DNA of 64,000 nucleotides, taken from positions 124,001-188,000 of the IMG/VR virus record IMGVR_UViG_3300042391_000634. One strand, given 5' to 3'. Shown here in pieces: positions 5,369 to 21,890 of this stretch (position 1 is the first letter of the stretch; each line of letters begins with the position of its first letter). Position numbers and translations under genes: made by a program. Below the pieces are notes generated by a model. The model did not search any database and was not told where the DNA came from. It was given only the letters and a program-made list of their open reading frames with translations.

Positions 5369-5391
5369 CTTTTTTATTAATAAATATCAAA

Positions 5392-6915
5392 TTAGTTGAT
5401 TCTAATCGATTTATTTAATATGTCATTTTCAAGGGTCTTAAAAAGTTCTTTTAATTGGTTACCGTCATCGTAATCATACTGACCAACAATCGGCATTAAT
5501 GGGTTATGTCTATGGGTAAAAATAACCTCAATCATCTTGGTAAGTAATTTTAACAAGTTTTCACCTCTAACGGTTGAAAATGTGGCTGTACCTATACGTT
5601 TTATATAATCTTCCTGTGTTAACTCGTAACCGTTTAAATCAAAAAATGGGACAGGATTATTAGATTCATTATTACCCAAATCGGTGGATAATAGATATAT
5701 TTTATCTGCGGTAACTGAACCAAATGTTTGTTCAGGACTATTAGGGTCAATTTTTATTCTCTCTTCTATAGAGTCAACACTTTTAACTTCAGACTTAGCA
5801 TTTTTAGCTGACCATATTAATCCACTTGAAGGTCCTACTCTTAAAACATTAATATTATTTAATATAGTCTGTCTATTAGTATTTTCTTCTGTGGTTGTTA
5901 AAATTCTAGTTTTAAATGTTTTTCTTGGTCTGAAATAAAAAGGATGTGCATCACCACTCTCATATTGTTCATTTAATTCATTAAGACCTTTATCGTGTAT
6001 TAAAAAAATCTTATCTCTAATTTCTTTATAAATGTCATTTATAGAAGATGCTGTTATTGTGTATGTGGTGGTAACACTATCATTTTCAGTATTAACTAAT
6101 TTTACTAAAGAGTCTGTAATTATTGAATGTTCAGTAAAATAGTTTGTTTTAAATTCATCACCAAAAGGTGTAACAACTTTATAAACATATAGATCTATTT
6201 TAGCTGTATTTTCATCAGATAAATCTTTTAATTTATCCACCTCATATTCTATGATGTATTTTAAATCTTTATTTTCTGATACACTATTTTTAACAACAAC
6301 TTCTTCTATCACCATTTTCTTCGGAAACTTTTTTAAATAAATTCTAGCCGATTTTTTGGCCATAATCGGATGGTCAAGTAATATCGTTCTATTTGCAACA
6401 CTTGCCGCTTCTTTTGATAATAATTTACCACCTCTTAATTGTAATCCATTTTCAGTAAAAAGAACGTCGGATCCGTTCTTACCATATATGGCAAAATCTT
6501 TTTCGTTTGCAAACGCATTATTAGATTTTTTATTGATGTATTCACCAGTGGTATTAAGTATATTTGGTTTGTTTTTTACATTAGAACCATACGTTGTATT
6601 GGCAACTTGTTGTGAAAATGTTTGACCATTATAATCATACATTGTTGTAAATGGTCCTGCGATGTATTCAACGTTTACGGTATCTTTGTCGGTGTCATAT
6701 TGAATAATTTTAACAGACTGATTAATTTCTGGTATAAAATTAATATTATTAGGTAAAAATGGTTTAGCTAAAAATAAATCTCTATCTCCCCATGGTTCAT
6801 AGTCAATAGCCTTTTCTTTTTGCCCCGTATATTCGTTATAACGACTAACTCGTATTCTACCAATACCTAATGGGTCAACATTATCAATACATTTACCAAT
6901 ATCTATTATTTTCAT
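5392..6915 (-). CDS. Baseplate central spike (gp5/gpV-like)
   Basis: N-terminal OB-fold signature IGKCIDNVDPLGIGRIRV; C-terminal VRGENLLKLL...FTHRH with the H-x-H apex motif of gpV-type spikes. Confidence 0.7.
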   Translation of the reverse strand: MKIIDIGKCIDNVDPLGIGRIRVSRYNEYTGQKEKAIDYEPWGDRDLFLAKPFLPNNINFIPEINQSVKIIQYDTDKDTVNVEYIAGPFTTMYDYNGQTFSQQVANTTYGSNVKNKPNILNTTGEYINKKSNNAFANEKDFAIYGKNGSDVLFTENGLQLRGGKLLSKEAASVANRTILLDHPIMAKKSARIYLKKFPKKMVIEEVVVKNSVSENKDLKYIIEYEVDKLKDLSDENTAKIDLYVYKVVTPFGDEFKTNYFTEHSIITDSLVKLVNTENDSVTTTYTITASSINDIYKEIRDKIFLIHDKGLNELNEQYESGDAHPFYFRPRKTFKTRILTTTEENTNRQTILNNINVLRVGPSSGLIWSAKNAKSEVKSVDSIEERIKIDPNSPEQTFGSVTADKIYLLSTDLGNNESNNPVPFFDLNGYELTQEDYIKRIGTATFSTVRGENLLKLLTKMIEVIFTHRHNPLMPIVGQYDYDDGNQLKELFKTLENDILNKSIRIN

Positions 6916-7115
6916 TTACCAGTATATCTTTTTTCTAATTCCTTATTAACTTTATTATATAACCCCTCAACCCCATCTAAATGACGTGTTAAATCAATAA
7001 TCAATTCCTTTGTTTTTTCAAATTCTTCTAACAATTCATCTGCAACAATGACTAAATCTTTATTAGATTTATTTCCAACATCGTTTGCTATTTCAATTAA
7101 TTTTTGACTTTCCAT
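6912..7115 (-). CDS. Hypothetical small coiled-coil protein
   Basis: 67-aa ORF overlapping the spike start (ATGA-type coupling); helical heptad pattern. Confidence 0.6.
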   Translation of the reverse strand: MESQKLIEIANDVGNKSNKDLVIVADELLEEFEKTKELIIDLTRHLDGVEGLYNKVNKELEKRYTGK

Positions 7116-7118
7116 ATT

Positions 7119-9077
7119 TTAATTTTTCATTAATGCATATGATGGTGTTCCAACAGGTCCATTAACACTTTTAAATGGTGTAATGGCTAAGTTATCGGCA
7201 AAACCTTGTACTTGTGCTGACGTTGATAAGACATGATAATTAGGTTCCCCATTTATATCTCCAGTTGGTATTCCCATATTTTGCATTTTTTCAGTTATAT
7301 CCATTGTTGTTTTAACCGCACTAAATCCAGGTAATTTACCGGCTAATAATAATAAAGGATTTGGTATATCTAAACCACCTGAAGCACTAAGTGCTCCACT
7401 AATTGCCGCACCAATTGCGGCGATAATCGCTTCACAACTGTCTAATCCTGTTTCAAGTACTTGTTTTAATAGAGCAATTAATGCTGCTATAACTAAATAA
7501 TATCTTTTTAATTTATCTTTTAATATTTTTCTAATTATTTTCATTAAGAAATTCTTAAGGTCGGCTTTAACTCTTTTCCAAAACTCCCTAATAAATTTCC
7601 AAAATAATTCTTTTATTGTACAAGTGAAGATTTTTTTAAGTTTTTTCATTAAATCTTTAGCATCAACAATTGCATTTTTAGCTCCGGCAACAAATTGTTT
7701 ATATATTATTACAAATGGTAAAAACATTTTTGGTGAAAGAATACTCATTATTAATGCTTTAGGAATATTAAAAATAAAAGATAAGTTAATTGAAATTTGA
7801 AAACTAGGTAAGTCAATTGAAAAATCTGACTGTTCATATGCATCCGATGCTGCCTTATTTAATGCACTATCTATTAATTTTCTTCTATCTTGTTTATCTT
7901 CTAAATAAACAAAATCCTCCATGTGAACTGTATTATATGGAACTTCATAGTTATTACAGTCAGCAAATTTTAACACCTTTCTTCGTCTTGCGTCTTCATC
8001 ATCTAAATCAATACCCTCAACATCATCAAAATCAAAATAAAATTCATCATTTTCTTCGTCATCATTAAATAAATTGGTTGGTGTTGAACCGGTTAATCTA
8101 CCACTATTACAGAATGCAAAAATTTTATTTAACATTCTCTCAAGATTTTGAATTGCCTCATCTAAAGACGGAGCAAAATCTAAAGGATTTTCCATACCAC
8201 TAAACGAACCACCAACACTAACACCATTTTTATCAGCAGACGCATTACATGCTTTTAATGTCATTAACATTGCCTTTTTAACAATCTCATTCAAATCTGG
8301 CATTTCTATATTTGAATAATAATCATTAAAAAAATCACCGACATTTACAAAACCATATTGACCCACCCCATTACCTTGAGTTAAACCTGTGATTTTAAAC
8401 CATTGGTGTTCTGATTGCCATGTAGAAGTAAATAAAGTTTTATTACTCGGTGTGTCATATTGATATTGGATTCCGATTGGTGTTGTTGTTCCTGAATTTA
8501 TAAATGTTTGGTATAAACCATAATTTATTTGAGCTTTATTACCATTTCTTTTTTTAGGGTCTTCATACATTATTTTACCATAGTCACTTTCAGGTGGAAC
8601 TTTAAACATACCTAAAAAATCAATTTCTCTTGGGTAAATGTTAACTTCGTCCATTTCTTGTGTTCCACCCATAACTTGATTTGTACCACAAATACCATCA
8701 TTTGCAAAAAATGCGTTTTTAACACAATCCATAAGGATTTGTTTAGCTGAATTTTTTGTAACATCAACTGAATCCAATACGTGTTGTCTAAGTCTTTGAG
8801 TTGATTGAAATCTATCGGGATCGTTAACAGTTCTACCCGCATCTAAAAATTTATTAACAACTGAAACAACTTCTTCAAATATGTTTTTTTTGTTTTTAGT
8901 TTTCGGTTTTTTGTTTCCTAATTTAGATTTAAGTTGTTCTAATTTGGTATTTAAATTTGGAAGGTTTGGTTGAAACTTTTTTAAAGCATCTTCAGGACTT
9001 ATGTTAAGATTAGCATATTTGTCTTGGTCAACACTTTTTTGTATAATATCAATAGTATTTTTTAGTGATTCAAACAT
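7119..9077 (-). CDS. Large hypothetical protein, probably structural
   Basis: 652-aa ORF coupled to the 125-aa gene under a TATTTAT box and upstream of the spike gene; no family recognised. Confidence 0.55.
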   Translation of the reverse strand: MFESLKNTIDIIQKSVDQDKYANLNISPEDALKKFQPNLPNLNTKLEQLKSKLGNKKPKTKNKKNIFEEVVSVVNKFLDAGRTVNDPDRFQSTQRLRQHVLDSVDVTKNSAKQILMDCVKNAFFANDGICGTNQVMGGTQEMDEVNIYPREIDFLGMFKVPPESDYGKIMYEDPKKRNGNKAQINYGLYQTFINSGTTTPIGIQYQYDTPSNKTLFTSTWQSEHQWFKITGLTQGNGVGQYGFVNVGDFFNDYYSNIEMPDLNEIVKKAMLMTLKACNASADKNGVSVGGSFSGMENPLDFAPSLDEAIQNLERMLNKIFAFCNSGRLTGSTPTNLFNDDEENDEFYFDFDDVEGIDLDDEDARRRKVLKFADCNNYEVPYNTVHMEDFVYLEDKQDRRKLIDSALNKAASDAYEQSDFSIDLPSFQISINLSFIFNIPKALIMSILSPKMFLPFVIIYKQFVAGAKNAIVDAKDLMKKLKKIFTCTIKELFWKFIREFWKRVKADLKNFLMKIIRKILKDKLKRYYLVIAALIALLKQVLETGLDSCEAIIAAIGAAISGALSASGGLDIPNPLLLLAGKLPGFSAVKTTMDITEKMQNMGIPTGDINGEPNYHVLSTSAQVQGFADNLAITPFKSVNGPVGTPSYALMKN

Positions 9078-9454
9078 TATAATGAATAGTTACTTGTTTT
9101 ATTATCGTTTCCATCATTAACCAATCTATCTAAAATCTCACGATCTTCATCAGATAAAGTCAATTTACCCATAGAACCTCCACCACCTGAACCACCGGTG
9201 GTTTGTTTAAGTAAAACACTTTGTAATTTAACTAGTGAAATTTTCTTTTCAGTACAATCGTTTAATATCTTCTGTTGTTCTTTAATAACAGGTCCAATTG
9301 TACTCATGTCTTCGGCGTCCTTCATAAAACTCATCATTTTTCTCAAAATGGTGGATGCAGTATTTCTGTTCTCAACAACATCGTTGTAGATTTCCTGCAT
9401 TAAGGCTAACGCTGAATCAACATCTAATGTAATATTGTTTCTTTGTGTTCTCAT
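9077..9454 (-). CDS. Hypothetical helical protein
   Basis: 125-aa ORF, TATTTAT box at 9459-9465 (minus), stop overlaps the next start. Confidence 0.6.
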   Translation of the reverse strand: MRTQRNNITLDVDSALALMQEIYNDVVENRNTASTILRKMMSFMKDAEDMSTIGPVIKEQQKILNDCTEKKISLVKLQSVLLKQTTGGSGGGGSMGKLTLSDEDREILDRLVNDGNDNKTSNYSL

Positions 9455-9468
9455 ATCAATAAATAGAT

Positions 9469-10170
9469 TTATTCTAAAAATCCACCCAAAATACCGTCAT
9501 ATAGTTTCTTATAACGTTTAAGAGAGACTCTAATCTCTTTTGTTGATAAGGAGGTCATTTCTCGTAAAGAGAGTAAGATAAGGTTCTTATTGAATTTGTT
9601 ACCATCACCTACTTGAAATATCTTATCAAAATTACTGAAGATTTCAAGTAATGCGTAACCTAACTTTCTCTCGTTATCAGATAGATTTTTTTCTTTTTCA
9701 ATAAAATTTTCTAAATCAATTGTAAGTTTAGTGATAACAGAACTATAATCAATTACGAATTCATCCGTAACATATGAATGGTCTTTACTATCCTCAAAGT
9801 CGGAAGATATATCATCATAAGAAACCTGTCTATTCTGTTCTTTGGTATCTTTCTGTATTGCTCCCATAAGGTAGTTTTTACAGATGGTTCCAAAATATGA
9901 ATACGCTTTAGTATTCTTTGTGTGGTCAAATTTGTTAATCTTAGTTATAAGAAAAGACATTGTATCGGTATGAATTTCTTCAAATTCCATATCTTTTCTA
10001 TAAAGTTTATAACGTCGAATAATTGATTCAACCATTATAATTAGGGGTTCACGTAAATATTCATTGAATATCTTATTTCTTTCTGTTTCGTCACTACTTT
10101 CTAAGTAATTGACTACCGCCTTCTCTTGATCCTCCCCAAAATATATTTTTTGGGTTCTTGGTCTTGGCAT
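9469..10170 (-). CDS. gp55: Phage sigma factor, gp55-like (late transcription)
   Basis: Sigma region-2 pattern LIIMVESIIRRY...EEIHTDTMSFLITKINKFDHTKNTKAYSYFGTICKNYL, comparable to the gp55 F-D-x-x-K...A-Y-F-T-x-I motif; no clear region-4 HTH. Confidence 0.7.
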   Translation of the reverse strand: MPRPRTQKIYFGEDQEKAVVNYLESSDETERNKIFNEYLREPLIIMVESIIRRYKLYRKDMEFEEIHTDTMSFLITKINKFDHTKNTKAYSYFGTICKNYLMGAIQKDTKEQNRQVSYDDISSDFEDSKDHSYVTDEFVIDYSSVITKLTIDLENFIEKEKNLSDNERKLGYALLEIFSNFDKIFQVGDGNKFNKNLILLSLREMTSLSTKEIRVSLKRYKKLYDGILGGFLE

Positions 10171-10949
10171 TAAGCTATTTCATAATTTATATCTCGTTTA
10201 TTTTTAAAGAAAAATTCTTTCTTTGCACTCTCTAACCAAAATTTAGATTCATCTTCTGTAAGTTTAGAAGAATCATCATTTTTATATAACCAAAATAATG
10301 AGTCCTCTCTAAAATTTAAATGTTGATAACCTATCTTTGGAACAGTCATAATTTTAACACTATTGTGTGTTAATCTTAATAAAAATTCATATCCAAATGT
10401 AAGTTTAATATTATCCTTTAATGAACCGTTATCTTTAATAGTTTTTGTTCTATACAAACCACCTGAAATTTGATAATTTTGAAAGTCTAATAAAACTTCA
10501 TTATCTAACGTTCCTTGTTTTTCTGTAAACCCATAAGCCCAAACTGACTCATTTGTGAAACTAATAAAATTACCTTCACTATTAATGTCCTTAACCACAG
10601 GTAAAAAAACGTCAACATCTGTATATTTTTTTACGTATTCATCGATAGATTTTAACCAAATTGGTTTATACTCATCATCCACTTCTAAAATACTAAACCA
10701 TTCAGTATCACATTTTTCAATACCCAAATTAATTTGAGAACAAAAATCAGTTTTAGAACTATTGGTAACTATGTTAACATCTAATACCTCAGAAATATTT
10801 GTTAATTCAGATTTAACTGAAGGAGGACAAACAATCATTAATTTAACATCTTCGTGAAATTGTTCTACGGATTTAATTGCGTTATCTAACATTACACGGT
10901 AACTATCTTCTATTCTATGTACTGGTAAAATTATTGTTATATTTTTCAT
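10170..10949 (-). CDS. Glycosyltransferase, GT-A fold (GT2-like)
   Basis: N-terminal ITIILPVH strand, SQINLGIEKCDTEWFSILEVDD (DXD-equivalent), GYEFLLRL. Confidence 0.85.
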   Translation of the reverse strand: MKNITIILPVHRIEDSYRVMLDNAIKSVEQFHEDVKLMIVCPPSVKSELTNISEVLDVNIVTNSSKTDFCSQINLGIEKCDTEWFSILEVDDEYKPIWLKSIDEYVKKYTDVDVFLPVVKDINSEGNFISFTNESVWAYGFTEKQGTLDNEVLLDFQNYQISGGLYRTKTIKDNGSLKDNIKLTFGYEFLLRLTHNSVKIMTVPKIGYQHLNFREDSLFWLYKNDDSSKLTEDESKFWLESAKKEFFFKNKRDINYEIA

Positions 10950-10950
10950 A

Positions 10951-12006
10951 TTATTTATCTTCTTGTTTTAAATTTTCTAATGCTTTTGATAATAGTTCAA
11001 TTCTTTTATTTGTAAATGAATTGAAGATAGACAAAATATTATTTTTAGTTATTTCTGTATCATATGGTAATAACGTTTCTTTCATTTTTTCTTTAACTTC
11101 GTTAGTTAATTCAATACCATCTAACCAAGCTAAAACAAATGTACCTAAAATGTCAACTAATTTATTTTCATCATATGTCCACATACCGTTTTCACTTAAC
11201 CAATCAGGTTCTATGTTTGGTATTTTACCGATAATTGGAACACCTGATTTCATTGATTCTAATGGGAATGTTCCAAATGTTGATTCGTCGTCGGCCCATA
11301 ATGAAACCATACAGTCTTTTAATCCTTCAGAGAATTCTTCATAAGTCATTTGTACCATATCTCTAAAAGTAATCCAACGTAAATGTGGATATTTTAAATA
11401 AAACTCAGAAATGAATTTTCTATGTTTAACTCTATCTCTACAACTAATTGCAATATATGGTTTAACAATATCTTCAGTAGGTTTAAAATTATCACCAATA
11501 ATTGGTGGAATAATATGAACTAACATTTCTGGAAAAATTTCATTAATATATTTTTTTGTTGCTTCAGTTGTTACAATTACACGATCAAATCCATAATCAC
11601 TCCAACGACTACCAACAGGTAATGTTTCAAAAATATATTCTTTTTGTTGTACTAACATTATTTTAGTACATCTTACATTTGCCAATTGTTGTAAAACATT
11701 TGAATAATATTCAGGAACAACAATAACGTCATCAATTGAAATATTAATCTTATCTTCTTTAATTGATACGAGTTCTAAAACATCGTATTTTTCACCCAAC
11801 CATTCTGGTTTGATGTATGATTTATCTTCTGTTAAAATTTTTGAATTATATCCATTTTCTTTTAACGTAAGTGCCATATCGTAGATATGTTTAATTGCTG
11901 CTCTCGCATTGTTTTTAGTGTCATATGTTAAAAAATATATGACATTTTCTTTTGTTTCTAACCTTCCTAAGGCTGATTCAAGTTTTTCTATGTTTTCTTT
12001 ACTCAT
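10951..12006 (-). CDS. Glycosyltransferase, GT-B fold (GT4-like)
   Basis: DDVIVVPEY and C-terminal ESTFGTFPLESMKSGVPIIG (E-x-F-G-x-x-x-L-E-A/S-M donor-binding motif). Confidence 0.8.
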   Translation of the reverse strand: MSKENIEKLESALGRLETKENVIYFLTYDTKNNARAAIKHIYDMALTLKENGYNSKILTEDKSYIKPEWLGEKYDVLELVSIKEDKINISIDDVIVVPEYYSNVLQQLANVRCTKIMLVQQKEYIFETLPVGSRWSDYGFDRVIVTTEATKKYINEIFPEMLVHIIPPIIGDNFKPTEDIVKPYIAISCRDRVKHRKFISEFYLKYPHLRWITFRDMVQMTYEEFSEGLKDCMVSLWADDESTFGTFPLESMKSGVPIIGKIPNIEPDWLSENGMWTYDENKLVDILGTFVLAWLDGIELTNEVKEKMKETLLPYDTEITKNNILSIFNSFTNKRIELLSKALENLKQEDK

Positions 12007-12283
12007 CTTCGTCTTCTATTAAAATTTGATTTTTTATTAATGTATTAAATGCAATTCTGAAAGATACCGATGTTCCCTCTTGTGCAAATTTCCCAAGTTC
12101 TTCATCTACGTCATCAATTTCACCTAAAACCCTATCCAAACACATTTTTATAATTTCGTATTTGAATATGTTCACTTCAGTTACTTCTGTTCCGTCTTCG
12201 TCTGGTATTGTTCCACCTGTTCTACATTTTTCTGTGATTCCATCAAGGTCAATGTAGTAGTTTTTTCCAAAGATTTCAACCAT
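11999..12283 (-). CDS. Hypothetical acidic protein
   Basis: 94-aa ORF filling the gap between the HAD-like and GT4 genes; overlaps both. Confidence 0.6.
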   Translation of the reverse strand: MVEIFGKNYYIDLDGITEKCRTGGTIPDEDGTEVTEVNIFKYEIIKMCLDRVLGEIDDVDEELGKFAQEGTSVSFRIAFNTLIKNQILIEDEDE

Positions 12284-12867
12284 GGTTCTTGTATTTCATT
12301 TAATTTAGTTATTTCTTTACCATAAGTAAAGAATTGATTATAAGTGGTATTAAATTTCATTCCTATTTTATTTTCGGGACATAAATCTAAAATACTTTTA
12401 TTGTCGGTAATCCATACATCACATTTACTCCAACAATCTTCAATATCTTTAGTTTTAATAAACTTAATATTATTACCAAGATATCCATTTTTTGATAAAA
12501 AGAATAGTGTTGCGGGTTTTGATTTACCTAACTCGTTTAACCCAACTAATGTAAAGTTGTGTTCAGTATTTTCAAATAAAATTTTGTGTAAATCTGTGAA
12601 AGTGGTGGAATAACTTATTCCGGCATGACCAAAAATCTCAATAGGGTATTCAATGAATAAAAAGTTTTCAAACTCTTCTTGTGATTGAAATTTGTAAGAA
12701 TTTAAAAGATTATCATTTTGAATAGGTTCAGTAACCGCATATTCAAATGTGTTTTCTTCTTCACCTTCAATTATAATATCACTATTAAAATATGATTCAT
12801 TATAATGATAATCAAACTTTTGAATTGTATTTCTTAAAACACCATCAATACTAATATATATTTCCAT
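12181..12867 (-). CDS. HAD-superfamily 5'(3')-deoxyribonucleotidase-like protein with degenerate catalytic motifs
   Basis: N-terminal IYISIDGVLRN (canonical DxDGV) and DVWITDN (canonical D-x-x-I-D-D). Confidence 0.6.
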   Translation of the reverse strand: MEIYISIDGVLRNTIQKFDYHYNESYFNSDIIIEGEEENTFEYAVTEPIQNDNLLNSYKFQSQEEFENFLFIEYPIEIFGHAGISYSTTFTDLHKILFENTEHNFTLVGLNELGKSKPATLFFLSKNGYLGNNIKFIKTKDIEDCWSKCDVWITDNKSILDLCPENKIGMKFNTTYNQFFTYGKEITKLNEIQEPWLKSLEKTTTLTLMESQKNVEQVEQYQTKTEQK

Positions 12868-12904
12868 TATAAAAATATACGATGATTAAAATCATAAGTA
12901 AATA

Positions 12905-13639
12905 CTAATCATATCTTTGTAAAATATCACCAATAATTGGATTACGAACAATGTCTTGCATTCCAAACTCAAAAATTCCAATTCCTTTAACATCTTGTAA
13001 TCTCATTTTAGCATCGAATAAACCAGATTTAGTTTTATCTCTAAATTTATCTGATTGTTCAAGATCTCCTGAAATAAAGAATTTTGAATTAAATCCAATA
13101 CGAGTTAATAATAACTTAATCTGTGATGGGGTGGCATTTTGAGCTTCTTCAAAAACAAGAATAGTATTATCTACGTTCCAACCTCTCATATAAGCAAGAG
13201 CAGCAACTTCAATGTAACCTTGGTCTTTTAATTCTTCGCGAGCCTCTTTACCAATAATTTTATTTAATAGATAATATGATGGATAAATGTATGGGTCTAA
13301 TTTCTCTTCTAAACCCCCTGGAAGTGACCCTAATTTCTCCTCAGCTTCAACTGCGGGTCTTACTATGATAATCTTCTCATACTTGTTAGAATCGTCGTAT
13401 AATAGGTCTACCGCACGTTTCATTGCTATGTAGGACTTACCTACACCTGCTGGACCGAAACATAATGTAATTTGATTTTCTCCAAGAATGTTCCAATATA
13501 TTTCTTGGTTTTTTGTAAGGAACTTTTCTTTAGGACGTTTAATGATTTGTCTAATCCTATCTTTATGTGATATCTTCTTCTCTTCTACTAATACAGGTGG
13601 TGGTTGGTGAGATGTTTTGATTCTTGTTTTATAAGCCAA
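12905..13639 (-). CDS. phoH: PhoH-family ATPase
   Basis: Walker A FGPAGVGKS, IIIVRPAVE, LGSLPG, AYMRGW, EEAQN, GDLEQSD; TTG start. Confidence 0.95.
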   Translation of the reverse strand: MAYKTRIKTSHQPPPVLVEEKKISHKDRIRQIIKRPKEKFLTKNQEIYWNILGENQITLCFGPAGVGKSYIAMKRAVDLLYDDSNKYEKIIIVRPAVEAEEKLGSLPGGLEEKLDPYIYPSYYLLNKIIGKEAREELKDQGYIEVAALAYMRGWNVDNTILVFEEAQNATPSQIKLLLTRIGFNSKFFISGDLEQSDKFRDKTKSGLFDAKMRLQDVKGIGIFEFGMQDIVRNPIIGDILQRYD

Positions 13640-13682
13640 AGTGAATAGTTTTAATTGTTCCGTTTATTGTTTATAAATATCA

Positions 13683-14330
13683 TCAAACACCGGTAGATCC
13701 AAAACCACCTGACCCTCTTTCTGTATTAGATAATTCAGGAACCTCAGTCATATATATGGTAGGATAAGGTAATATGATAATCTGAGCACCTCTTTCACCC
13801 ACTTTATATTTAATTGAGTCTAAACCTTGAGTTTTCTTGAATGTTGCTTGTAATTCTCCTCTATATCCACTATCAATAACACCAACACAATTTGATAATA
13901 TTAAATCTTGATTTCTAACTGATGAACGAGGAAATACTAACCCAACATAACCTTTAGGAATTTCCATCGCAATACCAAAACCATATGAAACACTAAAAGA
14001 TGTATTTTCGATTTCTTTTGTAATGGTTAAATCCATACCAGCATCACCAACTTTTGAGTATGAAGGAATAACCGCATTAGAATCTAATTTTTTTACTTTA
14101 ACTAAAACACCACCACCCGTCATCGTTGATTGAGTGTTAATTATATTTTGTTCAGTAACAGGAGGAGTTCCTAAATCTTCTTGTAATTTATTTAATAAAT
14201 CATTTAATTCAGTAACAAAATTTAAATCAATTTCATCGTCATCCGATCCTATTGTTTTTTCAAAACCTTCTAATTGTTTTAGATAGTTTTCAACATCTTC
14301 TTTTTCCATTCTATTTGTTTTTCTTTTCAT
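13683..14330 (-). CDS. dut: Trimeric dUTPase with an acidic N-terminal extension
   Basis: All five motifs: GDAGMDL, FPRSS, GVIDSGYRGE, GAQII, RGSGGFGSTG. Confidence 0.96.
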   Translation of the reverse strand: MKRKTNRMEKEDVENYLKQLEGFEKTIGSDDDEIDLNFVTELNDLLNKLQEDLGTPPVTEQNIINTQSTMTGGGVLVKVKKLDSNAVIPSYSKVGDAGMDLTITKEIENTSFSVSYGFGIAMEIPKGYVGLVFPRSSVRNQDLILSNCVGVIDSGYRGELQATFKKTQGLDSIKYKVGERGAQIIILPYPTIYMTEVPELSNTERGSGGFGSTGV

Positions 14331-14526
14331 CCAACCATTTATCTAACGCCTTAATTCTTTGTTTAAGGTTATCGTCTTGGGGTCGTAAACATATCTCTAC
14401 AAATAAATCGGTAATCCTTACCAACTCTTCAAGAGTAACAGAAACACCAACTGATGTTACATATTCCAATGCCATTTTACTTTGTGATTGACGCATGATT
14501 TGTATCTCACGACTATAAAATTCCAT
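14311..14526 (-). CDS. Hypothetical protein
   Basis: 71-aa ORF in the leftward operon, overlapping the dut start. Confidence 0.6.
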   Translation of the reverse strand: MEFYSREIQIMRQSQSKMALEYVTSVGVSVTLEELVRITDLFVEICLRPQDDNLKQRIKALDKWLDEKKNK

Positions 14527-14546
14527 ATCAGTTGGTGTTTAAATTG

Positions 14547-14783
14547 TTATTTACTTTTGTAATACTCGGGTGTGTTCTTTTCGTCGATAACACACTCAAT
14601 TGGAAATTTAGCGACACTTAAACTTTCGCTACCTCTAATGTCACCTTCACGATATCTTGCCGCAACAATTGTTGCTTCTTCTACCGATTCGGCTTGAATT
14701 ACGTATTTTACTTTTTTAACACGAGGGTTTCCTTCTCTGTCCATTTGTTCGGTTTCATAACCGATTGTAACTTGATAATACAT
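14547..14783 (-). CDS. DUF4494-like small protein
   Basis: MYYQVTIGYE...KKVKYVIQAESVEEA resembles the Bacteroidota DUF4494 pattern (W/Y-F/Y-x-x-x-V-x-Y-E ... Y-L-V-x-A-x-S-x-x-E-A). Confidence 0.5.
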   Translation of the reverse strand: MYYQVTIGYETEQMDREGNPRVKKVKYVIQAESVEEATIVAARYREGDIRGSESLSVAKFPIECVIDEKNTPEYYKSK

Positions 14784-14790
14784 GTTGTTT

Positions 14791-16014
14791 CTATTTAATT
14801 ATTGATTTAAAAAATTCTACTCTATCTTTACATACTTTCTTTAATGAGTATGTATCTTTAACTGTTTCATATAAACGGTTTCCTAAGTCTTCAATCATAT
14901 TAGGATTTTCCACTAAACGTTTCATATGTTTCGCCCAATCTTTATGATTCTTTTTTGTTCCTACTAATAACGCATTTCCTTTATCGTTAAATTTACCTTC
15001 ATCAACTGCCGAAATTAAATCAATTGTAAAAGGGTCAACATCACTTGCAATAATTGCCTTCTTAAAAAATCCAGCCTCAATTATTTTCAATTGTGATTTA
15101 TTTGCGTTAAACACAGATTCAACTAACGGTGCTAATGAAACATCAAAGGTATTATAATTTGTCGCGTAGGTATTAATATTTTTAGTCCATCTTCTTCTAT
15201 ATGGTTCGTTTTCATCATTATATGGAGTTTCCACAAATGTTTCTAAATAACTTTTATATTCGGGACTTAACACTTTATAATTGTCTGTAAAGAATTTTTC
15301 ATACTTATACCAAACAGTCTCTATAGGTTGGATAGGTCTATTTTTTTGTTCTTTTGTTTCTGGATTAATTTCAGTAACACTTCCTCTTAAATCAAATCCA
15401 CATAAAACAAATTGAACTTTGTCTTTAAAAGAATTGTGTGTGGATGAAATACCATTTTCCATTAATTCTAAATCATAAAGATGTGATGAACCACCTAACC
15501 AACCAAATCTAATTTTGTCTGATTTTACAATTTCATTTTTAAATTGTGGTTCATCTTCATTAACTGCATTTGGGAAAACCTCAACATTCTTTACTTTTAA
15601 TTTATCCTTAATTGTTTTTGCAAAAATAGATGTTGTAGTTGTTACATAATCAACCTCCTTTAACATCTCCATCTTCATCTCACCTATTTTATTATTCTTA
15701 ATTGCATAATACATTGGGTGTCTTTGGTCTACAAACCATAAATCGTCAATATCCATTATGGTAATAATACCTTTAGATTTTAACCATTTAATTCTTTGAA
15801 TATTATTAGCGTGGTTTGTTTGATGAATAAATGTATGAAATACAACAATATTATAGTTTAAAAAAACTTCATCTCTATCCTCAACGTTATATGATATATC
15901 AACATGGACATCATCAGAATGTTTATCACCAATTAAAACATATGGATCTGTTATTCTAAATTTACCCACACCAAATTTATCTGAGGGAATTGCTAAAATT
16001 CTTATTTTCGACAT
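14791..16014 (-). CDS. Glycosyltransferase, GT-B fold (GT4-like)
   Basis: IMDIDDLW, VDYVTTTT, VFPNAV, RFGWLGGSSH, DVSLAPL...NKSQLKIIEAG. Confidence 0.85.
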   Translation of the reverse strand: MSKIRILAIPSDKFGVGKFRITDPYVLIGDKHSDDVHVDISYNVEDRDEVFLNYNIVVFHTFIHQTNHANNIQRIKWLKSKGIITIMDIDDLWFVDQRHPMYYAIKNNKIGEMKMEMLKEVDYVTTTTSIFAKTIKDKLKVKNVEVFPNAVNEDEPQFKNEIVKSDKIRFGWLGGSSHLYDLELMENGISSTHNSFKDKVQFVLCGFDLRGSVTEINPETKEQKNRPIQPIETVWYKYEKFFTDNYKVLSPEYKSYLETFVETPYNDENEPYRRRWTKNINTYATNYNTFDVSLAPLVESVFNANKSQLKIIEAGFFKKAIIASDVDPFTIDLISAVDEGKFNDKGNALLVGTKKNHKDWAKHMKRLVENPNMIEDLGNRLYETVKDTYSLKKVCKDRVEFFKSIIK

Positions 16015-16066
16015 TAATCATTAATTATATTGTTATAATATAACTAAAAAAAATGAAAAAACAAAA

Positions 16067-16636
16067 TTACTTTGCTTTATTTACTCCTGTGATTTTACCT
16101 TTGAATATCGAATCTCCTACCTTTAATACTAAATTTTCATTGATTGAAGATGTTGTGGATGCAGTAAGGATTTGATTTAATTTTTCATCCATTACTTTAC
16201 GAACTGTATTCTCAATAAGAACGGCCATTGCATTCATATCAATATTGTTATTAACAATAGTTTGTTTTGGTTGTGCCGATGGTCTTGTTGCCACACCTTC
16301 TTGTTCCATTAAACGTTTTGCACCTTTAACAAAATCCATATCTAAAGTATCATTTAAAGAAATTTGTTGAATTGGATTTTCCATCATTGCTTTTTTAATT
16401 GCGTCAGGTAACTTTGAATTTTGAATTTTATCAACACTCATATTAGCACCTACAGGTCTTGTATTAGGTTGTTGTGGGGTCTGCATTTCCATTAATTCTG
16501 ATGGGTCGGATCTTAACATTTCACTATTAACATGACCTCTTTCATAATTTCCACCATCCACTTTGTTCATAATTTTTTTAGCTTGAACTAATTTTTTCAT
16601 TAAATCGTTAGACGATATTGTTCCTTGTTGTGCCAT
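16067..16636 (-). CDS. Hypothetical protein (late, possibly virion)
   Basis: 189-aa ORF with a TATTTAT box at 16641-16647 (minus). Confidence 0.55.
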   Translation of the reverse strand: MAQQGTISSNDLMKKLVQAKKIMNKVDGGNYERGHVNSEMLRSDPSELMEMQTPQQPNTRPVGANMSVDKIQNSKLPDAIKKAMMENPIQQISLNDTLDMDFVKGAKRLMEQEGVATRPSAQPKQTIVNNNIDMNAMAVLIENTVRKVMDEKLNQILTASTTSSINENLVLKVGDSIFKGKITGVNKAK

Positions 16637-16669
16637 GTTAATAAATATTTTATATAATAATAAACCTTT

Positions 16670-19337: not shown

Positions 19338-19353
19338 CTAAATGGACTTTTAT

Positions 19354-19384
19354 ATAAATATCAAATGTTATGAAAGATATTTAT
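19354..19384. promoter_or_regulatory. Back-to-back TATTTAT late-promoter boxes (representative of 20 such sites)
   Basis: ATAAATA at 19354-19360 drives the leftward operon; TATTTAT at 19378-19384 drives the rightward structural genes. Confidence 0.7.
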
Positions 19385-19390
19385 ATTATA

Positions 19391-20929
19391 ATGAATAGAC
19401 AGAATATTTTAAACTATTACGGATCTAAATTGGATTTAAAGTTAGATTCATCGGAACTTTACGACTATCAGTTAACTACAAATGAGGTTGATTACGATAT
19501 AGATGTGTTAGATTTATCTACCCCAATCGTATATAGTGCACTTACAATTAACGATAGTTTAGAAGATTTGGGTTGCGCCAAAACAAGAATAACTCTTGTT
19601 GAGGATAACATAAATGATTTGTTAACTCCATATTCATATTTAGGATTATCAATGACTTTATCATATAATAATTTTGTTTCTTATTTTGGAACGGGTTATA
19701 CGTATACAATTTTAGATGGTAATAGATTTAAATTTACACTTTTAAACAATGAAAATCACTATTTTAAAATATACGGTTATAATCATACCGGTTTAACTTC
19801 TACAGTTTTATCAGGTTATACGGAATCAGAACTAATTTCAGGATTTACCACAAATGTTTACGTGGACAGAAGAAATATAGTAAATGTTTTTGCCTGTTCA
19901 TCACAAGCACCAAAAACAAACGTAAAACCTTGGGCGTTTAATTTTAATGAGGGTTTGGGAACCGATAAATGCACCCCAATATTAAAAAGAAGAACTGAAA
20001 AGGGATGGTCTTTGGATTTTATATTTAATAGAGAAAACTTATCTTGGTCAAATGGTAGTGTGTTTTATTATGTGGGTGTTAGAGGAGATAATGATATTGC
20101 CGATTATAGTGATAACAATTTATCTTTTGGATTTACATCAGATGGTAGAATTAAATGGACATCAAAACATTACTCAGGAACATGTGTAAATGATACATCA
20201 TATAATGAATCGTATTACACCTCGAGTGGACAAACTCCGACTTTATGTACAACGGGATTAACAAAAGATTTTAATGTTACAATTGTTTTTAATAGGTATA
20301 AACGTTACACCGATTGTGATATTGAAAATATGGGTGGACAAAATGATTTAATTATTGGTCCTCACCCTACGGATTATATTATTAATACTGGAGTCACTGC
20401 GGTTACATCTACTCAAGTAGTAACAGGATATTTGATTACGAACTCTTTAGATGTTTTAACAGGTGCAACACCTGTATATCAATATATTGAAACATTAAAT
20501 AAAAAATGGTCAGACGAAAGAGATAGAAGATTAGGAACCCTAAAAATATATTTAAATGGAAATTTAGTTTATAAATTAGAAGATTGGGAAGAGGTTATTC
20601 CTTCAAAAAGGGGAGAACAACCGTTTATTCAATCTTGGGGAGGGGGAACCGGATTAATGGGTGGAGTTCATGAAGGTGTTTGTTGTTTTAATATTAAATC
20701 AATAAAATATTATGAGGAACCATTAGATTTTATTCACGTTAAACATAACTTTATAACAAGATTAGATAACTTTGATTTTGAAATATGTAATGCACCTTGT
20801 GTGGATGATGTATATCAATATGTCCCACCAACCGCAACACCTACCCCTGTACCAACTAGTACCCCAACTCCAACCCCAACATCAACCCCAACTCCCACTC
20901 CAACGGCAACGCCTACACCGACAATATAA
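19391..20929 (+). CDS. Virion protein with a LamG/concanavalin-like domain and a C-terminal Pro/Thr tail
   Basis: NVTIVFNRY...GTLKIYLNGNLVYK...NIKSIKYYEEPL is LamG-like. The ORF track starts at 19370, but a TATTTAT box at 19378-19384 favours the ATG at 19391. Confidence 0.6.
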   Translation: MNRQNILNYYGSKLDLKLDSSELYDYQLTTNEVDYDIDVLDLSTPIVYSALTINDSLEDLGCAKTRITLVEDNINDLLTPYSYLGLSMTLSYNNFVSYFGTGYTYTILDGNRFKFTLLNNENHYFKIYGYNHTGLTSTVLSGYTESELISGFTTNVYVDRRNIVNVFACSSQAPKTNVKPWAFNFNEGLGTDKCTPILKRRTEKGWSLDFIFNRENLSWSNGSVFYYVGVRGDNDIADYSDNNLSFGFTSDGRIKWTSKHYSGTCVNDTSYNESYYTSSGQTPTLCTTGLTKDFNVTIVFNRYKRYTDCDIENMGGQNDLIIGPHPTDYIINTGVTAVTSTQVVTGYLITNSLDVLTGATPVYQYIETLNKKWSDERDRRLGTLKIYLNGNLVYKLEDWEEVIPSKRGEQPFIQSWGGGTGLMGGVHEGVCCFNIKSIKYYEEPLDFIHVKHNFITRLDNFDFEICNAPCVDDVYQYVPPTATPTPVPTSTPTPTPTSTPTPTPTATPTPTI

Positions 20930-20944: not shown

Positions 20945-21002
20945 AGGAAAATTCATATAAAAAAAATAAAAAAGACAAAAATAAAAGTATTTATATAACA
21001 TA

Positions 21003-21872: not shown

Positions 21873-21890
21873 TAGTTGTATTTATAACAT

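What the first reader, a model, noticed from the sequence alone, without database searches (positions are those of the whole stretch)
10170..16014. Three-glycosyltransferase cluster next to the late sigma factor and nucleotide-pool genes
Seen: one GT-A (10170-10949) and two GT-B enzymes (10951-12006, 14791-16014) in one leftward block with a HAD-like gene, dut, phoH and the sigma gene; the GT genes lack the late box. Known: in T4, alpha-glucosyltransferase lies beside gene 55 and modifies hmC-DNA; other phages glycosylate virions or host surfaces. No hydroxymethylase or other base-modifying gene is visible in this window. Inference: a multi-step glycosylation pathway acting either on phage DNA (anti-restriction/anti-CRISPR) or on virion Pro/Thr/Ser-rich tails.
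Basis: partly seen in the sequence, partly recalled or inferred. Interest (0 to 1): 0.6.

Follow-up and report, generated by a model that had tools for sequence, protein, structure and literature searches.

The report
Core glycosyltransferase trio of a jumbo phage
Three real sugar-transferring enzymes sit beside the late sigma factor of a 336-kb aquatic T4-like phage and are conserved across its whole clade, but the genome cannot make the hydroxylated bases that DNA glycosylation needs, so they most likely decorate proteins or glycans, not DNA.

Summary
The window has one GT-A gene (10170-10949) and two GT-B genes (10951-12006, 14791-16014) on the minus strand, alongside a gp55-like sigma factor, phoH and dut. 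The "HAD-like" gene is only weakly supported.

The window comes from a complete 335,630-bp IMG/VR phage. It is T4-like, about 30% GC, and probably infects Bacteroidota.

- **Conservation:** the gene order is identical in all 80 related viral contigs. It persists in relatives where GT-B1 is only 24-37% identical. The three GTs are among the 127 of 405 G000 genes also found in two near-complete relatives.
- **GT-B1:** it has no Pfam match. It folds confidently (pLDDT 96) and is specifically related to the Actinobacillus Agt/AmGGT alpha-1,6-glucosyltransferases, which add glucose to an existing sugar on glycopeptides or oligosaccharides.
- **GT-B2:** it has a generic GT4-type fold with no special link to T4 alpha-GT.
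- **DNA target:** the genome has no ThyA-family, ThyX, TET/JBP or TGT gene, and a complete relative also lacks ThyA. DNA glycosylation is therefore unlikely.
- **Other glycan genes:** at least ten further GT matches lie elsewhere in the genome, with sugar-nucleotide enzymes and PT-repeat and collagen-like proteins.

My best reading is a cytoplasmic glycosylation pathway acting on phage proteins. This is inferred, not shown. It is a new member of a known kind, of moderate interest.

The parts
9469..10170 (-). gp55-like late sigma factor, last gene of the non-late unit
   Evidence: phrog_234 at 9.4e-5; Sigma70_r2 and SigK-type NCBIfam hits; phmmer against T4 gp55 at 3e-6. 73-80% identical in two whole relatives.
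10170..10949 (-). GT-A fold glycosyltransferase (GT2-like), 259 aa (P0001)
   Evidence: PF00535 at 1.5e-7 and PF10111 at 7e-7, both above cut-off. Invariant E89-x-D91-D92 and a conserved aromatic/basic C-terminal helix in 35 orthologues. Atlas look-alike clusters are all viral GT2-like. No match in the cultured-phage collection.
10951..12006 (-). GT-B1: Agt/AmGGT-related GT-B glycosyltransferase, 351 aa (P0002)
   Evidence: AF2 pLDDT 96, pTM 0.93. Foldseek best hit 8xsg, E 9e-14, TM 0.71. Family profile against 8xsg 5.7e-28, next GT4 hits about 1e-5. 515 50%-cluster representatives. D93, P98-E99, D239 and E250 conserved family-wide.
11999..12283 (-). 94-aa acidic ORF of unknown function, conserved in all relatives, overlapping the 3' end of the NT5C-like gene
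   Evidence: Present in every related locus at 39-100% identity. No family hit.
12181..12867 (-). NT5C/HAD-like ORF (P0004); assignment weak
   Evidence: No Pfam hit. NT5C at E 0.046 in 3 of 31 orthologues; no PDB match. N-terminal S-I-D-G-V-L instead of D-x-D in the orthologues displayed.
12905..13639 (-). PhoH-like ATPase
   Evidence: PF02562 at 3.1e-62. Second most conserved core gene.
13672..13679 (-). Late-box motif (TATTTATA on the minus strand) upstream of phoH; the nearest promoter-like element upstream of GT-B1 and GT-A
   Evidence: Present in 24 of 51 distinct orthologous upstream regions.
13683..14330 (-). dUTPase with an N-terminal extension of about 80 aa
   Evidence: PF00692 at 3.6e-21; phrog_135 at 4e-47.
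14311..14783 (-). Two small conserved ORFs (71 aa and 78 aa) between GT-B2 and dut
   Evidence: The 78-aa ORF is in every locus that reaches it; the 71-aa ORF is in about half.
14791..16014 (-). GT-B2: GT4-type GT-B glycosyltransferase, 407 aa (P0003), with a conserved insertion of about 70 residues in the C-terminal domain
   Evidence: phrog_7162 at 4e-38. AF2 pLDDT 91. VIA Z 28.8 to sucrose-phosphate synthase and 27.9 to BshA; T4 alpha-GT 1y6f Z 20.9, rank 21. 118 invariant positions of 407 in 33 orthologues, including G174-G175-S176, K306, K310 and E313. Atlas fold clusters all viral.
16033..16069 (-). Conserved upstream region of GT-B2: a TAnnTTTG-like element, a T-run and a TTATATTATAA motif; no late box
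   Evidence: No late box in 45 distinct orthologous upstream regions, and the T-run/TTATAT architecture is conserved. TATATTAT also precedes the SNF2-type helicase gene.
9458..9465 (-). Late box that starts the downstream late (baseplate-hub) genes and marks the end of the GT/sigma unit
   Evidence: Conserved in 45 of 48 distinct orthologous upstream regions.
5392..9454 (-). Downstream late genes: 125-aa ORF, 652-aa ORF with a hydrophobic C-terminal part (tape-measure-like by inspection only), 67-aa ORF, 507-aa gp5/gpV-like hub protein
   Evidence: Translations. Atlas look-alikes of the 507-aa protein are Phage_base_V / Gp5_OB clusters at 0.90-0.91, a lead only. No Pfam or PHROG hits.
19370..20929 (+). 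Candidate acceptor: divergently transcribed late ORF of 519 aa ending in a TPTPTP-type tail
   Evidence: PT fraction 0.83 over 30 residues. Late box at 19378-19385. Orthologues in both whole relatives.

Best explanation
The three genes encode soluble, apparently active glycosyltransferases. They are core genes of a widespread aquatic T4-like jumbo-phage clade that probably infects Bacteroidota. They are transcribed with the late sigma factor, phoH and dut, not from late promoters of their own. I propose that they act in the infected cell's cytoplasm to build a short glycan on an acceptor that is not DNA. The most likely acceptors are phage-encoded proteins, such as the PT-repeat-bearing proteins found throughout the clade. 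In this scheme GT-A or GT-B2 attaches the first sugar. GT-B1, the Agt/AmGGT relative, extends it sugar-on-sugar using a UDP-hexose from the host pool.

Shown here: the folds, the family relationships, the conservation, and the absence of base-hydroxylating enzymes. Inferred: the acceptor, the order of steps and the donor.
For: - **Enzymes look intact.** GT-A has a GT2 domain and an invariant ExDD motif. Both GT-B models are high-confidence. GT-B1 keeps E250, which aligns with AmGGT Glu231 (whose E231A mutant had strongly reduced activity, PMC12159676), in 91% of 89 family members, and D93 in 100%.
- **GT-B1's nearest characterised family.** AmGGT/ApAgt stands out at profile E 5.7e-28 against about 1e-5 for other GT4 enzymes. 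These enzymes extend glucose on Glc-peptides or oligosaccharides in the cytoplasm (PMC12159676).
- **Core status.** Gene order is identical in 80 viral contigs. It is retained in contigs whose GT-B1 is only 37% and 24% identical. The genes are present in both whole relatives and rank 25, 43 and 51 of 112 core genes by identity, comparable to the tail sheath and DnaB. Some GT-B2 fold relatives carry a LAGLIDADG insertion.
- **DNA route lacks its prerequisite**.
- **Candidate acceptors exist.** PT-repeat proteins occur in all three whole genomes examined: 7, 1 and 6. One lies immediately beside the block (19370-20929).
- **The phage invests in glycans elsewhere.** This includes a TibC-like GT9 and sugar O-methyltransferases flanking a collagen-repeat fibre gene, and an RmlC/SDR/TPP sugar-nucleotide cluster.
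Against: - No direct evidence links any of the three GTs to a protein acceptor.
- PT linkers are common in phage fibres and need not be glycosylated.
- The positions that set acceptor choice in AmGGT/ApAgt differ in GT-B1 (Y100-Y101), so the acceptor cannot be read from homology.
- GT-B2 lies 2.8 kb from GT-B1, separated by dut, phoH and others. In a strongly syntenic T4-like core, conserved order does not prove a shared pathway.
- GT-A's conserved amphipathic aromatic/basic C-terminus could be a membrane anchor, which would point to a lipid-linked acceptor.
- The GT genes lack late boxes of their own, whereas virion proteins are late products.
- An HMW1C-type initiating N-glycosyltransferase was not searched for.
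Confidence: 0.4

Rival explanations
1. DNA hypermodification. The GTs glycosylate phage DNA as in T4 (alpha/beta-GT on 5hmC), RB69/DLP3 (arabinosyl-5hoC) or the TET-GT phages, giving anti-restriction or anti-CRISPR protection.
For: The genes sit next to the gp55-like sigma factor, as T4 alpha-gt roughly does. They are co-located with dut and lack late boxes of their own, which fits enzymes needed during replication. T4 alpha-GT is among the structural neighbours of GT-B2 at Z 20.9.
Against: The CheckV-complete genome has no ThyA-family gene, no ThyX, no TET/JBP and no TGT/DpdA. The only weak gp42 hit is an SGNH hydrolase carrying the GDS motif. A DTR-complete relative with the trio also lacks ThyA, and the one relative that has it carries a canonical-scoring copy at 3.8e-86, so ThyA presence does not track the trio. 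T4 alpha-GT ranks 21st, about 8 Z units below generic GT4 enzymes. T4 alpha- and beta-GT give no sequence hit. In the known phage DNA glycosylation routes described in the sources I consulted, sugar is added to a hydroxyl made by a ThyA homologue or a 5mC dioxygenase (PMC13326640; bioRxiv 10.1101/2023.12.21.572611).
Confidence: 0.06
2. Host-envelope or lipid-linked glycan remodelling. The GTs act on undecaprenyl-linked intermediates, LPS, capsule or peptidoglycan precursors. The effect would be to mask receptors, exclude superinfecting phages or redirect host sugar flux.
For: Both GT-B enzymes resemble GT4 enzymes that work on lipid-linked or membrane substrates, such as PimA, PglA, WaaG and WaaB. 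Source databases label homologues 'involved in cell wall biosynthesis'. GT-A has a conserved amphipathic C-terminal helix. Expression without a late box of its own fits an early host-directed function.
Against: The trio is strongly conserved across a clade diverged to about 40% identity in its structural genes. Host surface glycans are highly variable, so host-directed GTs would be expected in the accessory genome, which is where the other GTs of this phage lie. No flippase, polymerase or ligase genes are in the block. No transmembrane segments are evident by inspection.
Confidence: 0.22
3. No common pathway. The three GTs have unrelated acceptors, such as a small molecule, an RNA, a host protein or a phage protein. 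They are neighbours only because the T4-like core gene order is frozen.
For: GT-B2 is separated from GT-B1 and GT-A by six genes, including dut and phoH, and has its own conserved upstream region. All 19 genes from the 507-aa to the 519-aa ORF keep their order in the relatives, whatever their function. The top structural neighbours of GT-B2 are small-molecule GTs such as sucrose-phosphate synthase, BshA, TreT and GlgM. A fourth, unlinked GT2 gene (genome 86997-87707) is also core.
Against: GT-A and GT-B1 are separated by one base, and the GT-A stop overlaps the sigma start, so those two at least are co-expressed. GT-B1's family acts on a pre-existing sugar, which requires another GT upstream (PMC12159676). 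The supposed phosphatase partner for a sugar-phosphate route lacks the HAD nucleophile.
Confidence: 0.25

Closest known systems
Actinobacillus Agt / AmGGT alpha-1,6-glucosyltransferases (PDB 8XSG/8XSH; PMC12159676)
   Same: GT-B1 shares the GT-B fold (TM 0.71). The family-profile match is 5.7e-28, well above all other solved GTs. It keeps the uridine-binding Glu (E250 aligning with Glu231), the Arg/Lys before it, and the D...(P/S)E segment of the N-domain. Size is similar (351 vs 342 aa), and both are soluble cytoplasmic enzymes.
   Different: Only 17% identity. The first Glu of the E-x7-E pair (Glu223) aligns with Ser or Ala. The residues that decide between glycopeptide and oligosaccharide acceptors (AmGGT 78-79) are Tyr-Tyr here. 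No HMW1C-type NGT partner was looked for. The setting is viral, not an adhesin operon.
T4 alpha- and beta-glucosyltransferases with dCMP hydroxymethylase gp42
   Same: A GT gene lies near the gp55-type sigma gene. The overall fold class is GT-B. A dUTPase gene lies nearby.
   Different: No sequence similarity. T4 alpha-GT is only the 21st structural neighbour of GT-B2. The genome has no gp42/ThyA homologue or any other known base-hydroxylating enzyme.
Core glycosyltransferase orthogroups of 'moraphages', aquatic jumbo phages of Bacteroidota (PMC12619734)
   Same: Both are aquatic T4-like jumbo phages around 300 kb with predicted Bacteroidota hosts. Their shared genes include a sigma factor, PhoH, dUTPase and four putative GT orthogroups. 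Here three GTs in the block plus one at genome position 87 kb are core.
   Different: Membership of this genome in that lineage was not tested, because no moraphage sequences were at hand. That paper assigns no target or mechanism and does not report the Agt/AmGGT relationship.
Mycobacteriophage virion glycosylation (Freeman et al. 2023, as cited in PMC12619734)
   Same: Phage-encoded GTs are proposed or shown to glycosylate the phage's own structural proteins in the cytoplasm.
   Different: In mycobacteriophages the glycans are at the C-termini of the capsid and tail tube subunits. Here the GT genes belong to a non-late unit beside the sigma gene, and no acceptor is identified.
Giant-virus (Mimivirus, chlorovirus) autonomous glycosylation machinery
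   Same: This genome combines many GTs with its own sugar-nucleotide enzymes, sugar methyltransferases and collagen-like or repeat-rich fibre genes. BFVD neighbours of GT-B1 include many giant-virus GTs.
   Different: That resemblance concerns mainly the accessory islands outside the window. The BFVD matches are generic (TM 0.5-0.6).

Membership tests
GT-A fold, GT2-like glycosyltransferase (10170-10949) | Match to the GT2 domain model above its curated threshold | tested here: met
   PF00535 31.9 bits (cut-off 23.3); PF10111 29.4 bits (cut-off 27.3).
GT-A fold, GT2-like glycosyltransferase (10170-10949) | Acidic DXD-type metal/nucleotide-sugar binding motif | tested here: met
   E89, D91 and D92 are invariant in 35 orthologues at 62-88% identity.
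GT-A fold, GT2-like glycosyltransferase (10170-10949) | GT-A three-dimensional fold | not tested
The profile search against PDB gave only sub-threshold GT2 hits at E about 0.1.
Agt/AmGGT-type glucosyltransferase (10951-12006) | GT-B fold with specific sequence homology to the family | tested here: met
   pLDDT 96 model; Foldseek 8xsg E 9e-14, TM 0.71. Profile 5.7e-28. The single sequence alone gives 5.6e-6.
Agt/AmGGT-type glucosyltransferase (10951-12006) | Donor-binding residues (AmGGT Arg170, Lys171, Arg203, Glu223, Glu231) | tested here: inconclusive
   Glu231 aligns with E250 (91% conserved) and Arg170 with R190 (R/K in 85%). Glu223 aligns with Ser242 (Ser/Ala/Thr in the family). The other positions cannot be placed reliably at 17% identity.
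Agt/AmGGT-type glucosyltransferase (10951-12006) | Acceptor-determining residue pairs (AmGGT 15-16 and 78-79) | tested here: not met
   Positions aligned to 78-79 are Tyr100-Tyr101, hydrophobic or aromatic across the family. They match neither Gly-Val (oligosaccharide) nor Val-Met (glycopeptide).
Agt/AmGGT-type glucosyltransferase (10951-12006) | Partner initiating N-glycosyltransferase (HMW1C/NGT type) in the genome | not tested
   The cap on own-genome family searches was reached before this could be run.
GT4-type retaining GT-B glycosyltransferase (14791-16014) | GT-B fold closest to GT4 enzymes | tested here: met
   VIA Z 28.8 (sucrose-phosphate synthase 6kih), 27.9 (BshA), 26.9 (HepE). 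Foldseek E down to 7e-14.
GT4-type retaining GT-B glycosyltransferase (14791-16014) | Match to Glycos_transf_1-type Pfam models above threshold | tested here: not met
   PF13692 19.3 bits against a cut-off of 27. Only phrog_7162 matches strongly, at 4e-38.
GT4-type retaining GT-B glycosyltransferase (14791-16014) | E-x7-E motif of the C-terminal domain | tested here: inconclusive
   E313 is invariant, with K306 and K310. The position expected for the first Glu is not conserved.
T4-type DNA glucosylation system | Enzyme that makes a hydroxylated base (ThyA-family hydroxymethylase/hydroxylase, or TET/JBP dioxygenase) | tested here: not met
   PF00303, PF02511 and PF12851 give no match in the complete genome, while the controls ring. 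The weak gp42 hit is an SGNH hydrolase. A relative, G001, also lacks ThyA.
T4-type DNA glucosylation system | Homology of the GT to T4 alpha-GT (GT72) or beta-GT (GT63) | tested here: not met
   phmmer and tblastn give nothing better than E 0.08. 1y6f has Z 20.9 at rank 21, within the generic GT-B background.
T4-type DNA glucosylation system | Glycosylated bases in virion DNA | not testable with these tools
   Needs LC-MS of nucleosides or modification-aware sequencing of this uncultured phage.
Phage virion-protein glycosylation (mycobacteriophage type) | Glycan on structural proteins, dependent on the phage GTs | not testable with these tools
   Only candidate acceptors were found: PT-repeat proteins in all three genomes.
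HAD-superfamily phosphatase (12181-12867) | Motif I D-x-D with nucleophilic Asp, and a match to a HAD/NT5C model | tested here: not met
   The motif reads S-I-D (N-I-D in one) in the orthologues displayed from a 46-sequence alignment. No Pfam hit for the window protein. NT5C at E 0.046 in 3 of 31 members. No PDB match.

The most novel reading that the evidence does not exclude
The trio glycosylates nucleic acid (phage DNA, or an RNA) by a route that needs no ThyA-type or TET-type hydroxylated base. For example, the sugar could go directly onto a canonical base, or onto a base modified by an enzyme class not yet linked to hypermodification. This would fit the early/middle-type expression beside dut and the sigma factor, and the very high conservation.
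Probability: 0.04. Interest if true: 0.9.

Novelty: new member of a known kind. Interest (0 to 1): 0.4.

Why it matters
This phage clade is very abundant in public metagenomes. GT-B1 alone has about 1,600 clusters at 90% identity, and GT-B2 has more than 7,900 scored relatives.

The three GTs are as conserved as the tail sheath or the replicative helicase, so they do something the phage cannot do without. If they glycosylate virion proteins, this would be a clade-wide, core-encoded virion glycosylation system in T4-like phages of Gram-negative hosts. That would bear on receptor recognition, particle stability and how such phages are seen by grazers or immune systems.

The negative result is also useful. 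It shows that a GT beside gene 55 does not by itself indicate T4-style DNA glucosylation.

GT-B1 also gives the small, recently solved Agt/AmGGT family a large set of viral relatives.

Tried and rejected
- **T4 late box:** TATAAATA is not enriched (16 found, 18.6 expected). The real box is TATTTAT[AT].
- **Cultured-phage collection:** megablast of the region found nothing, and tblastn of GT-A and GT-B1 found nothing. GT-B2 hits only a 735-kb uncultured phage (33%) and phi92/rV5-like phages (about 28%), annotated 'glycosyltransferase' or 'putative disaccharide synthase' without experimental basis.
- **Possible cryptic hydroxymethylase:** a weak phmmer hit of T4 gp42 to a 246-aa ORF (genome 332500-333240, E 4e-4) turned out to be an SGNH/GDSL hydrolase with a paralogue two genes away. 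It was rejected.
- **Glycosylated queuosine or deazaguanine:** no TGT/DpdA gene, and only 4 tRNAs plus a tmRNA-like gene.
- **GT plus HAD sugar-phosphate (compatible-solute) pathway:** suggested by the sucrose-phosphate-synthase-like fold of GT-B2, but the HAD-like protein lacks the nucleophile and any family match.
- **Uninformative searches:** the BFVD search for GT-B1 and profile searches of GT-A and GT-B2 against PDB sequences gave only generic or sub-threshold hits. PHROG and Pfam scans of the flanking ORFs gave nothing significant.
- **Transcription boundaries:** the terminator scan found nothing beyond chance (7 found, 4.8 expected), so transcription units could not be delimited.
- **Not run:** Complex prediction, because I make no binding claim; the look-up of sequencing runs and read laying, because an uncultured phage gives no infection time course.

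Full report
**What the window is.** The window is bases 124,001-188,000 of a single 335,630-bp IMG/VR virus record that CheckV rates 100% complete. GC content is about 30%. The record encodes a T4-type major capsid protein, tail sheath, baseplate wedge, family-B DNA polymerase, DnaB-like helicase and ribonucleotide reductase. The nearest capsid relatives are an uncultured 484-kb phage, Microcystis phage Mel-JY01, the Flavobacterium 'immuto' phages and Rhodothermus phage RM378, at 35-44% identity over about half the protein. It is therefore a distant T4-like jumbo myovirus. The sigma factor's weak NCBIfam hits include a Bacteroidota-named sigma-70 subfamily. A TAnnTTTG-like element lies upstream of one GT gene. 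Both fit a Bacteroidota host but do not prove it.

**The observation.**
- *GT-A (10170-10949, 259 aa).* It passes Pfam's thresholds for Glycos_transf_2 and Glyco_tranf_2_2. It keeps an invariant E89-x-D91-D92 motif in 35 orthologues.
- *GT-B1 (10951-12006, 351 aa).* It has no Pfam, PHROG or NCBIfam hit. An exhaustive profile-free search found 515 cluster representatives. With 89 of them as an alignment, AlphaFold2 gave a model with pLDDT 96 and pTM 0.93. 35 of the 89 members touch Glycos_transf_1.
- *GT-B2 (14791-16014, 407 aa).* It matches phrog_7162 'glycosyltransferase' at 4e-38 and models at pLDDT 91.
- *Neighbours.* phoH, dut and the gp55-like sigma gene are confirmed. The 'HAD-like' gene is not. 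It has no family hit. Only 3 of 31 orthologues graze NT5C, at E 0.046. The position of the catalytic Asp is Ser, or Asn in one, in the orthologues displayed from a 46-sequence alignment.

**What the enzymes resemble.** GT-B1's best structural match is the Actinobacillus minor glucosyltransferase AmGGT (8xsg; Foldseek E 9e-14, TM 0.71). Generic GT4 enzymes follow. At the sequence level the family profile hits AmGGT at 5.7e-28, while the next solved GTs score about 1e-5, so the relationship is specific.

AmGGT and its relative ApAgt are cytoplasmic alpha-1,6-glucosyltransferases that add glucose to an existing glucose. ApAgt acts on N-glucosylated adhesin peptides. AmGGT acts on oligosaccharides. 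Two residue pairs decide which (PMC12159676).

In GT-B1 the uridine-binding Glu (E250, aligning with Glu231) and the D93/P98-E99 segment are conserved family-wide. The residues aligned to the acceptor-determining pair are Tyr-Tyr, unlike either characterised enzyme. GT-B1 is therefore probably an elongating, sugar-on-sugar enzyme whose acceptor cannot be read from homology.

GT-B2 has a standard GT4-type GT-B fold: Z 28.8 to sucrose-phosphate synthase and 27.9 to BshA. T4 alpha-GT (1y6f) appears only at rank 21 with Z 20.9. T4 alpha-GT and beta-GT give no sequence hit anywhere in the genome. Its ESM-Atlas fold clusters are all viral, and one of them carries a LAGLIDADG insertion.

**Conservation.** A scan of IMG/VR with GT-B1 returned 80 loci. 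In every one that reaches far enough, the order is the same: 507-aa ORF, 67-aa ORF, 652-aa ORF, 125-aa ORF, sigma, GT-A, GT-B1, 94-aa ORF, NT5C-like, phoH, dut, small ORFs, GT-B2, 189-aa ORF. The GTs are 60-92% identical across these loci. The neighbouring 652-aa and 507-aa proteins fall to 33-45% in the more distant relatives.

The arrangement survives in metagenomic contigs whose GT-B1 is only 37% identical. There the order is GT-B, PhoH, three small ORFs, GT-B1, a 148-aa ORF and a GT2, with dut absent. By gene sizes it also appears to survive in a contig at 24% identity.

I took down two near-complete relatives: G001 (310,542 bp, with terminal repeats) and G002 (288,260 bp, 92% complete). 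Only 127 of the 405 G000 ORFs have a match in both. The whole block is among them. Of the 112 that match over at least 70% of their length, GT-B1, GT-A and GT-B2 rank 25th, 43rd and 51st by identity, alongside the tail sheath (34th) and DnaB (29th). These are core genes under strong constraint.

**Why DNA is an unlikely target.** Searches of the whole genome with the Pfam models for thymidylate synthase (which covers dCMP/dUMP hydroxymethylases and the new 5-hydroxy-dCMP synthases), ThyX, TET/JBP and TGT/DpdA found nothing, while the control genomes rang. A weak phmmer hit of T4 gp42 proved to be an SGNH hydrolase. G001 carries the trio and also lacks ThyA. G002 carries the trio and has a high-scoring, canonical-looking ThyA (3.8e-86). 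ThyA presence therefore varies independently of the GTs.

In the known phage DNA glycosylation routes described in the sources I consulted, the sugar is transferred to a hydroxyl created by a ThyA homologue or a 5-methylpyrimidine dioxygenase (PMC13326640; abstract of bioRxiv 10.1101/2023.12.21.572611). In T4, a-gt and gene 55 lie 1.8 kb apart with five genes between them.

**Transcription signals.** T4's TATAAATA is at chance level. The motif TATTTAT[AT] precedes 70 ORFs against about 6 expected. These include the sheath, tail and fibre genes. On the minus strand of the block, boxes lie before:
- the 251-aa ORF (19353-19360);
- the 189-aa ORF (16640-16647);
- phoH (13672-13679);
- the 125-aa ORF (9458-9465);
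- the 462-aa ORF (5379-5386).

None lies directly before GT-B2, GT-B1, GT-A or sigma, and none does in 45-50 distinct orthologous upstream regions. The box before the 125-aa ORF is kept in 45 of 48 regions.

GT-B2 has its own conserved upstream region: a TAnnTTTG-like element, a T-run and TTATATTATAA. The last motif also precedes the SNF2-type helicase gene. GT-B1 and GT-A have no intergenic space at all. However, the phoH and 189-aa boxes upstream, and the lack of convincing terminators, mean late read-through cannot be excluded.

The genes downstream of sigma look like baseplate-hub genes. The 507-aa protein has Gp5_OB/Phage_base_V look-alikes at 0.90-0.91, which is a lead only. The 652-aa protein has a long hydrophobic C-terminal part.

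**The wider glycan context (outside the window).** Genome searches found at least ten further GT matches:
- Glycos_transf_1 matches at 72.5, 289, 304 and 305 kb;
- Glycos_transf_2 matches at 18, 87, 297, 298 and 302.5 kb;
- two GT9 genes at 286-294 kb, found by the later Pfam scan.

The stretch 285-306 kb is a dense island. It holds:
- a radical-SAM enzyme;
- a TibC-like GT9;
- a GT4-FkbM methyltransferase fusion;
- a second GT9;
- a collagen-repeat fibre with an S74 chaperone domain;
- further GT2, GT4 and GT92-like genes;
- sugar O-methyltransferases.

The stretch 261-271 kb encodes RmlC, several SDR epimerase/dehydratases (one fused to a 2OG oxygenase) and split TPP enzymes. No nucleotidyltransferase was found. 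Both islands are absent from G001 and G002, so they are accessory.

Five collagen-like proteins occur only in G000. PT-repeat proteins occur in all three genomes: 7, 1 and 6. One of them is the 519-aa late ORF immediately beside the block. A fourth GT (GT2, genome 86997-87707) is also core. This matches the report that aquatic 'moraphages' of Bacteroidota share four GT orthogroups, a sigma factor, PhoH and dUTPase (PMC12619734). I could not test whether this genome belongs to that lineage.

**Interpretation.** The facts favour a conserved acceptor that is not DNA. The extreme conservation argues against variable host surface glycans. GT-B1's family and the clade-wide PT-repeat proteins point towards glycosylation of phage proteins. 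I put that at 0.4. The other readings are:
- host-envelope or lipid-linked glycan remodelling: 0.22;
- no common pathway, which overlaps the other readings: 0.25;
- DNA modification: 0.06.

The acceptor, the donor and the order of steps are all inferred.

**Novelty.** The enzymes are new members of known GT classes. The presence of core GTs in such phages has been noted before, without a mechanism. New here are the specific Agt/AmGGT relationship of GT-B1, the genome-wide exclusion of the DNA route, the definition of the late box, and the split between a core GT set and accessory glycan islands.

Noticed in passing
G000:C1:285267-306040 (L013:5267 to L014:6040), outside the window: Large accessory glycosylation island: radical SAM, TibC-like GT9, GT4-FkbM methyltransferase fusion (911 aa), a second GT9 (707 aa), GT2/GT4/GT92-like genes and sugar O-methyltransferases. 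It flanks a collagen-repeat fibre gene with a Peptidase_S74 chaperone domain (294170-296197) that has a late box. The island is absent from relatives G001 and G002.
   Followed up: partly
G000:C1:261443-270819 (L012:1443-10819): Sugar-nucleotide cluster: RmlC, two SDR epimerase/dehydratase genes (one an 870-aa fusion with a 2OG-Fe(II) oxygenase domain) and split TPP-dependent enzymes. This suggests synthesis of unusual deoxy or branched sugars. No sugar nucleotidyltransferase was found in the genome. The cluster is accessory, absent from G001 and G002.
   Followed up: partly
G000:C1:226505-245424 and 189631-201934: Runs of very large proteins with collagen-like GSS/GTS repeats (up to 79 triplets; 893-1631 aa) and with long TPTPTP repeats (up to 1895 aa). 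They are presumably fibres. The collagen-like ones occur only in this genome, not in G001 or G002.
   Followed up: partly
whole genome; window examples 9458-9465, 13672-13679, 16640-16647, 20988-20995, 21879-21886: The phage's late-promoter box appears to be TATTTAT[AT], found 5-40 nt upstream of start codons. 70 ORFs have it against about 6 expected. T4's TATAAATA is at chance level.
   Followed up: yes
window 16670-17404 (-) and 17404-18096 (-): The 244-aa ORF has a faint WYL-like N-terminal part and a TEPEVTP/PQPK-rich repeat tail. The 230-aa ORF consists of four tandem units of about 45 aa, each carrying a GDE-x-GKGQ motif. Both are core genes of unknown function.
   Followed up: no
window 12181-12283: The NT5C-like ORF and the 94-aa ORF overlap by 103 nt in different frames. 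The overlapped C-terminal tail of the NT5C-like protein is poorly conserved, so one of the two annotated ends may be wrong.
   Followed up: no
G000:C1:332500-334676: Two paralogous SGNH/GDSL-type hydrolases (246 and 267 aa) lie near the contig end, and another GDSL-like ORF at 284598-285266. They may be glycan esterases or acyltransferases. One of them caused a spurious weak hit to T4 gp42.
   Followed up: partly
G000:C1:86275-91590: ARAGORN calls a tmRNA-like gene (tag ATSTVAVA) and four tRNAs (Glu, Ser, Met, Thr). They lie next to the fourth core GT2 gene (86997-87707).
   Followed up: no
relatives G001 (310,542 bp) and G002 (288,260 bp): Thymidylate synthase is variably present in the clade. 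G000 and G001 have none, neither ThyA nor (in G000) ThyX. G002 has a high-scoring ThyA in a 442-aa frame.
   Followed up: partly
ESM Atlas cluster, row 4: A viral cluster of 787-aa proteins with the GT-B2 fold carries a LAGLIDADG_3 domain, as an intein or homing-endonuclease insertion would.
   Followed up: no
G000:C1:307247-308588: Two adjacent N6/N4 DNA methyltransferase genes lie at the edge of the GT island. Only simple DNA methylation genes were seen among the regions I annotated.
   Followed up: no
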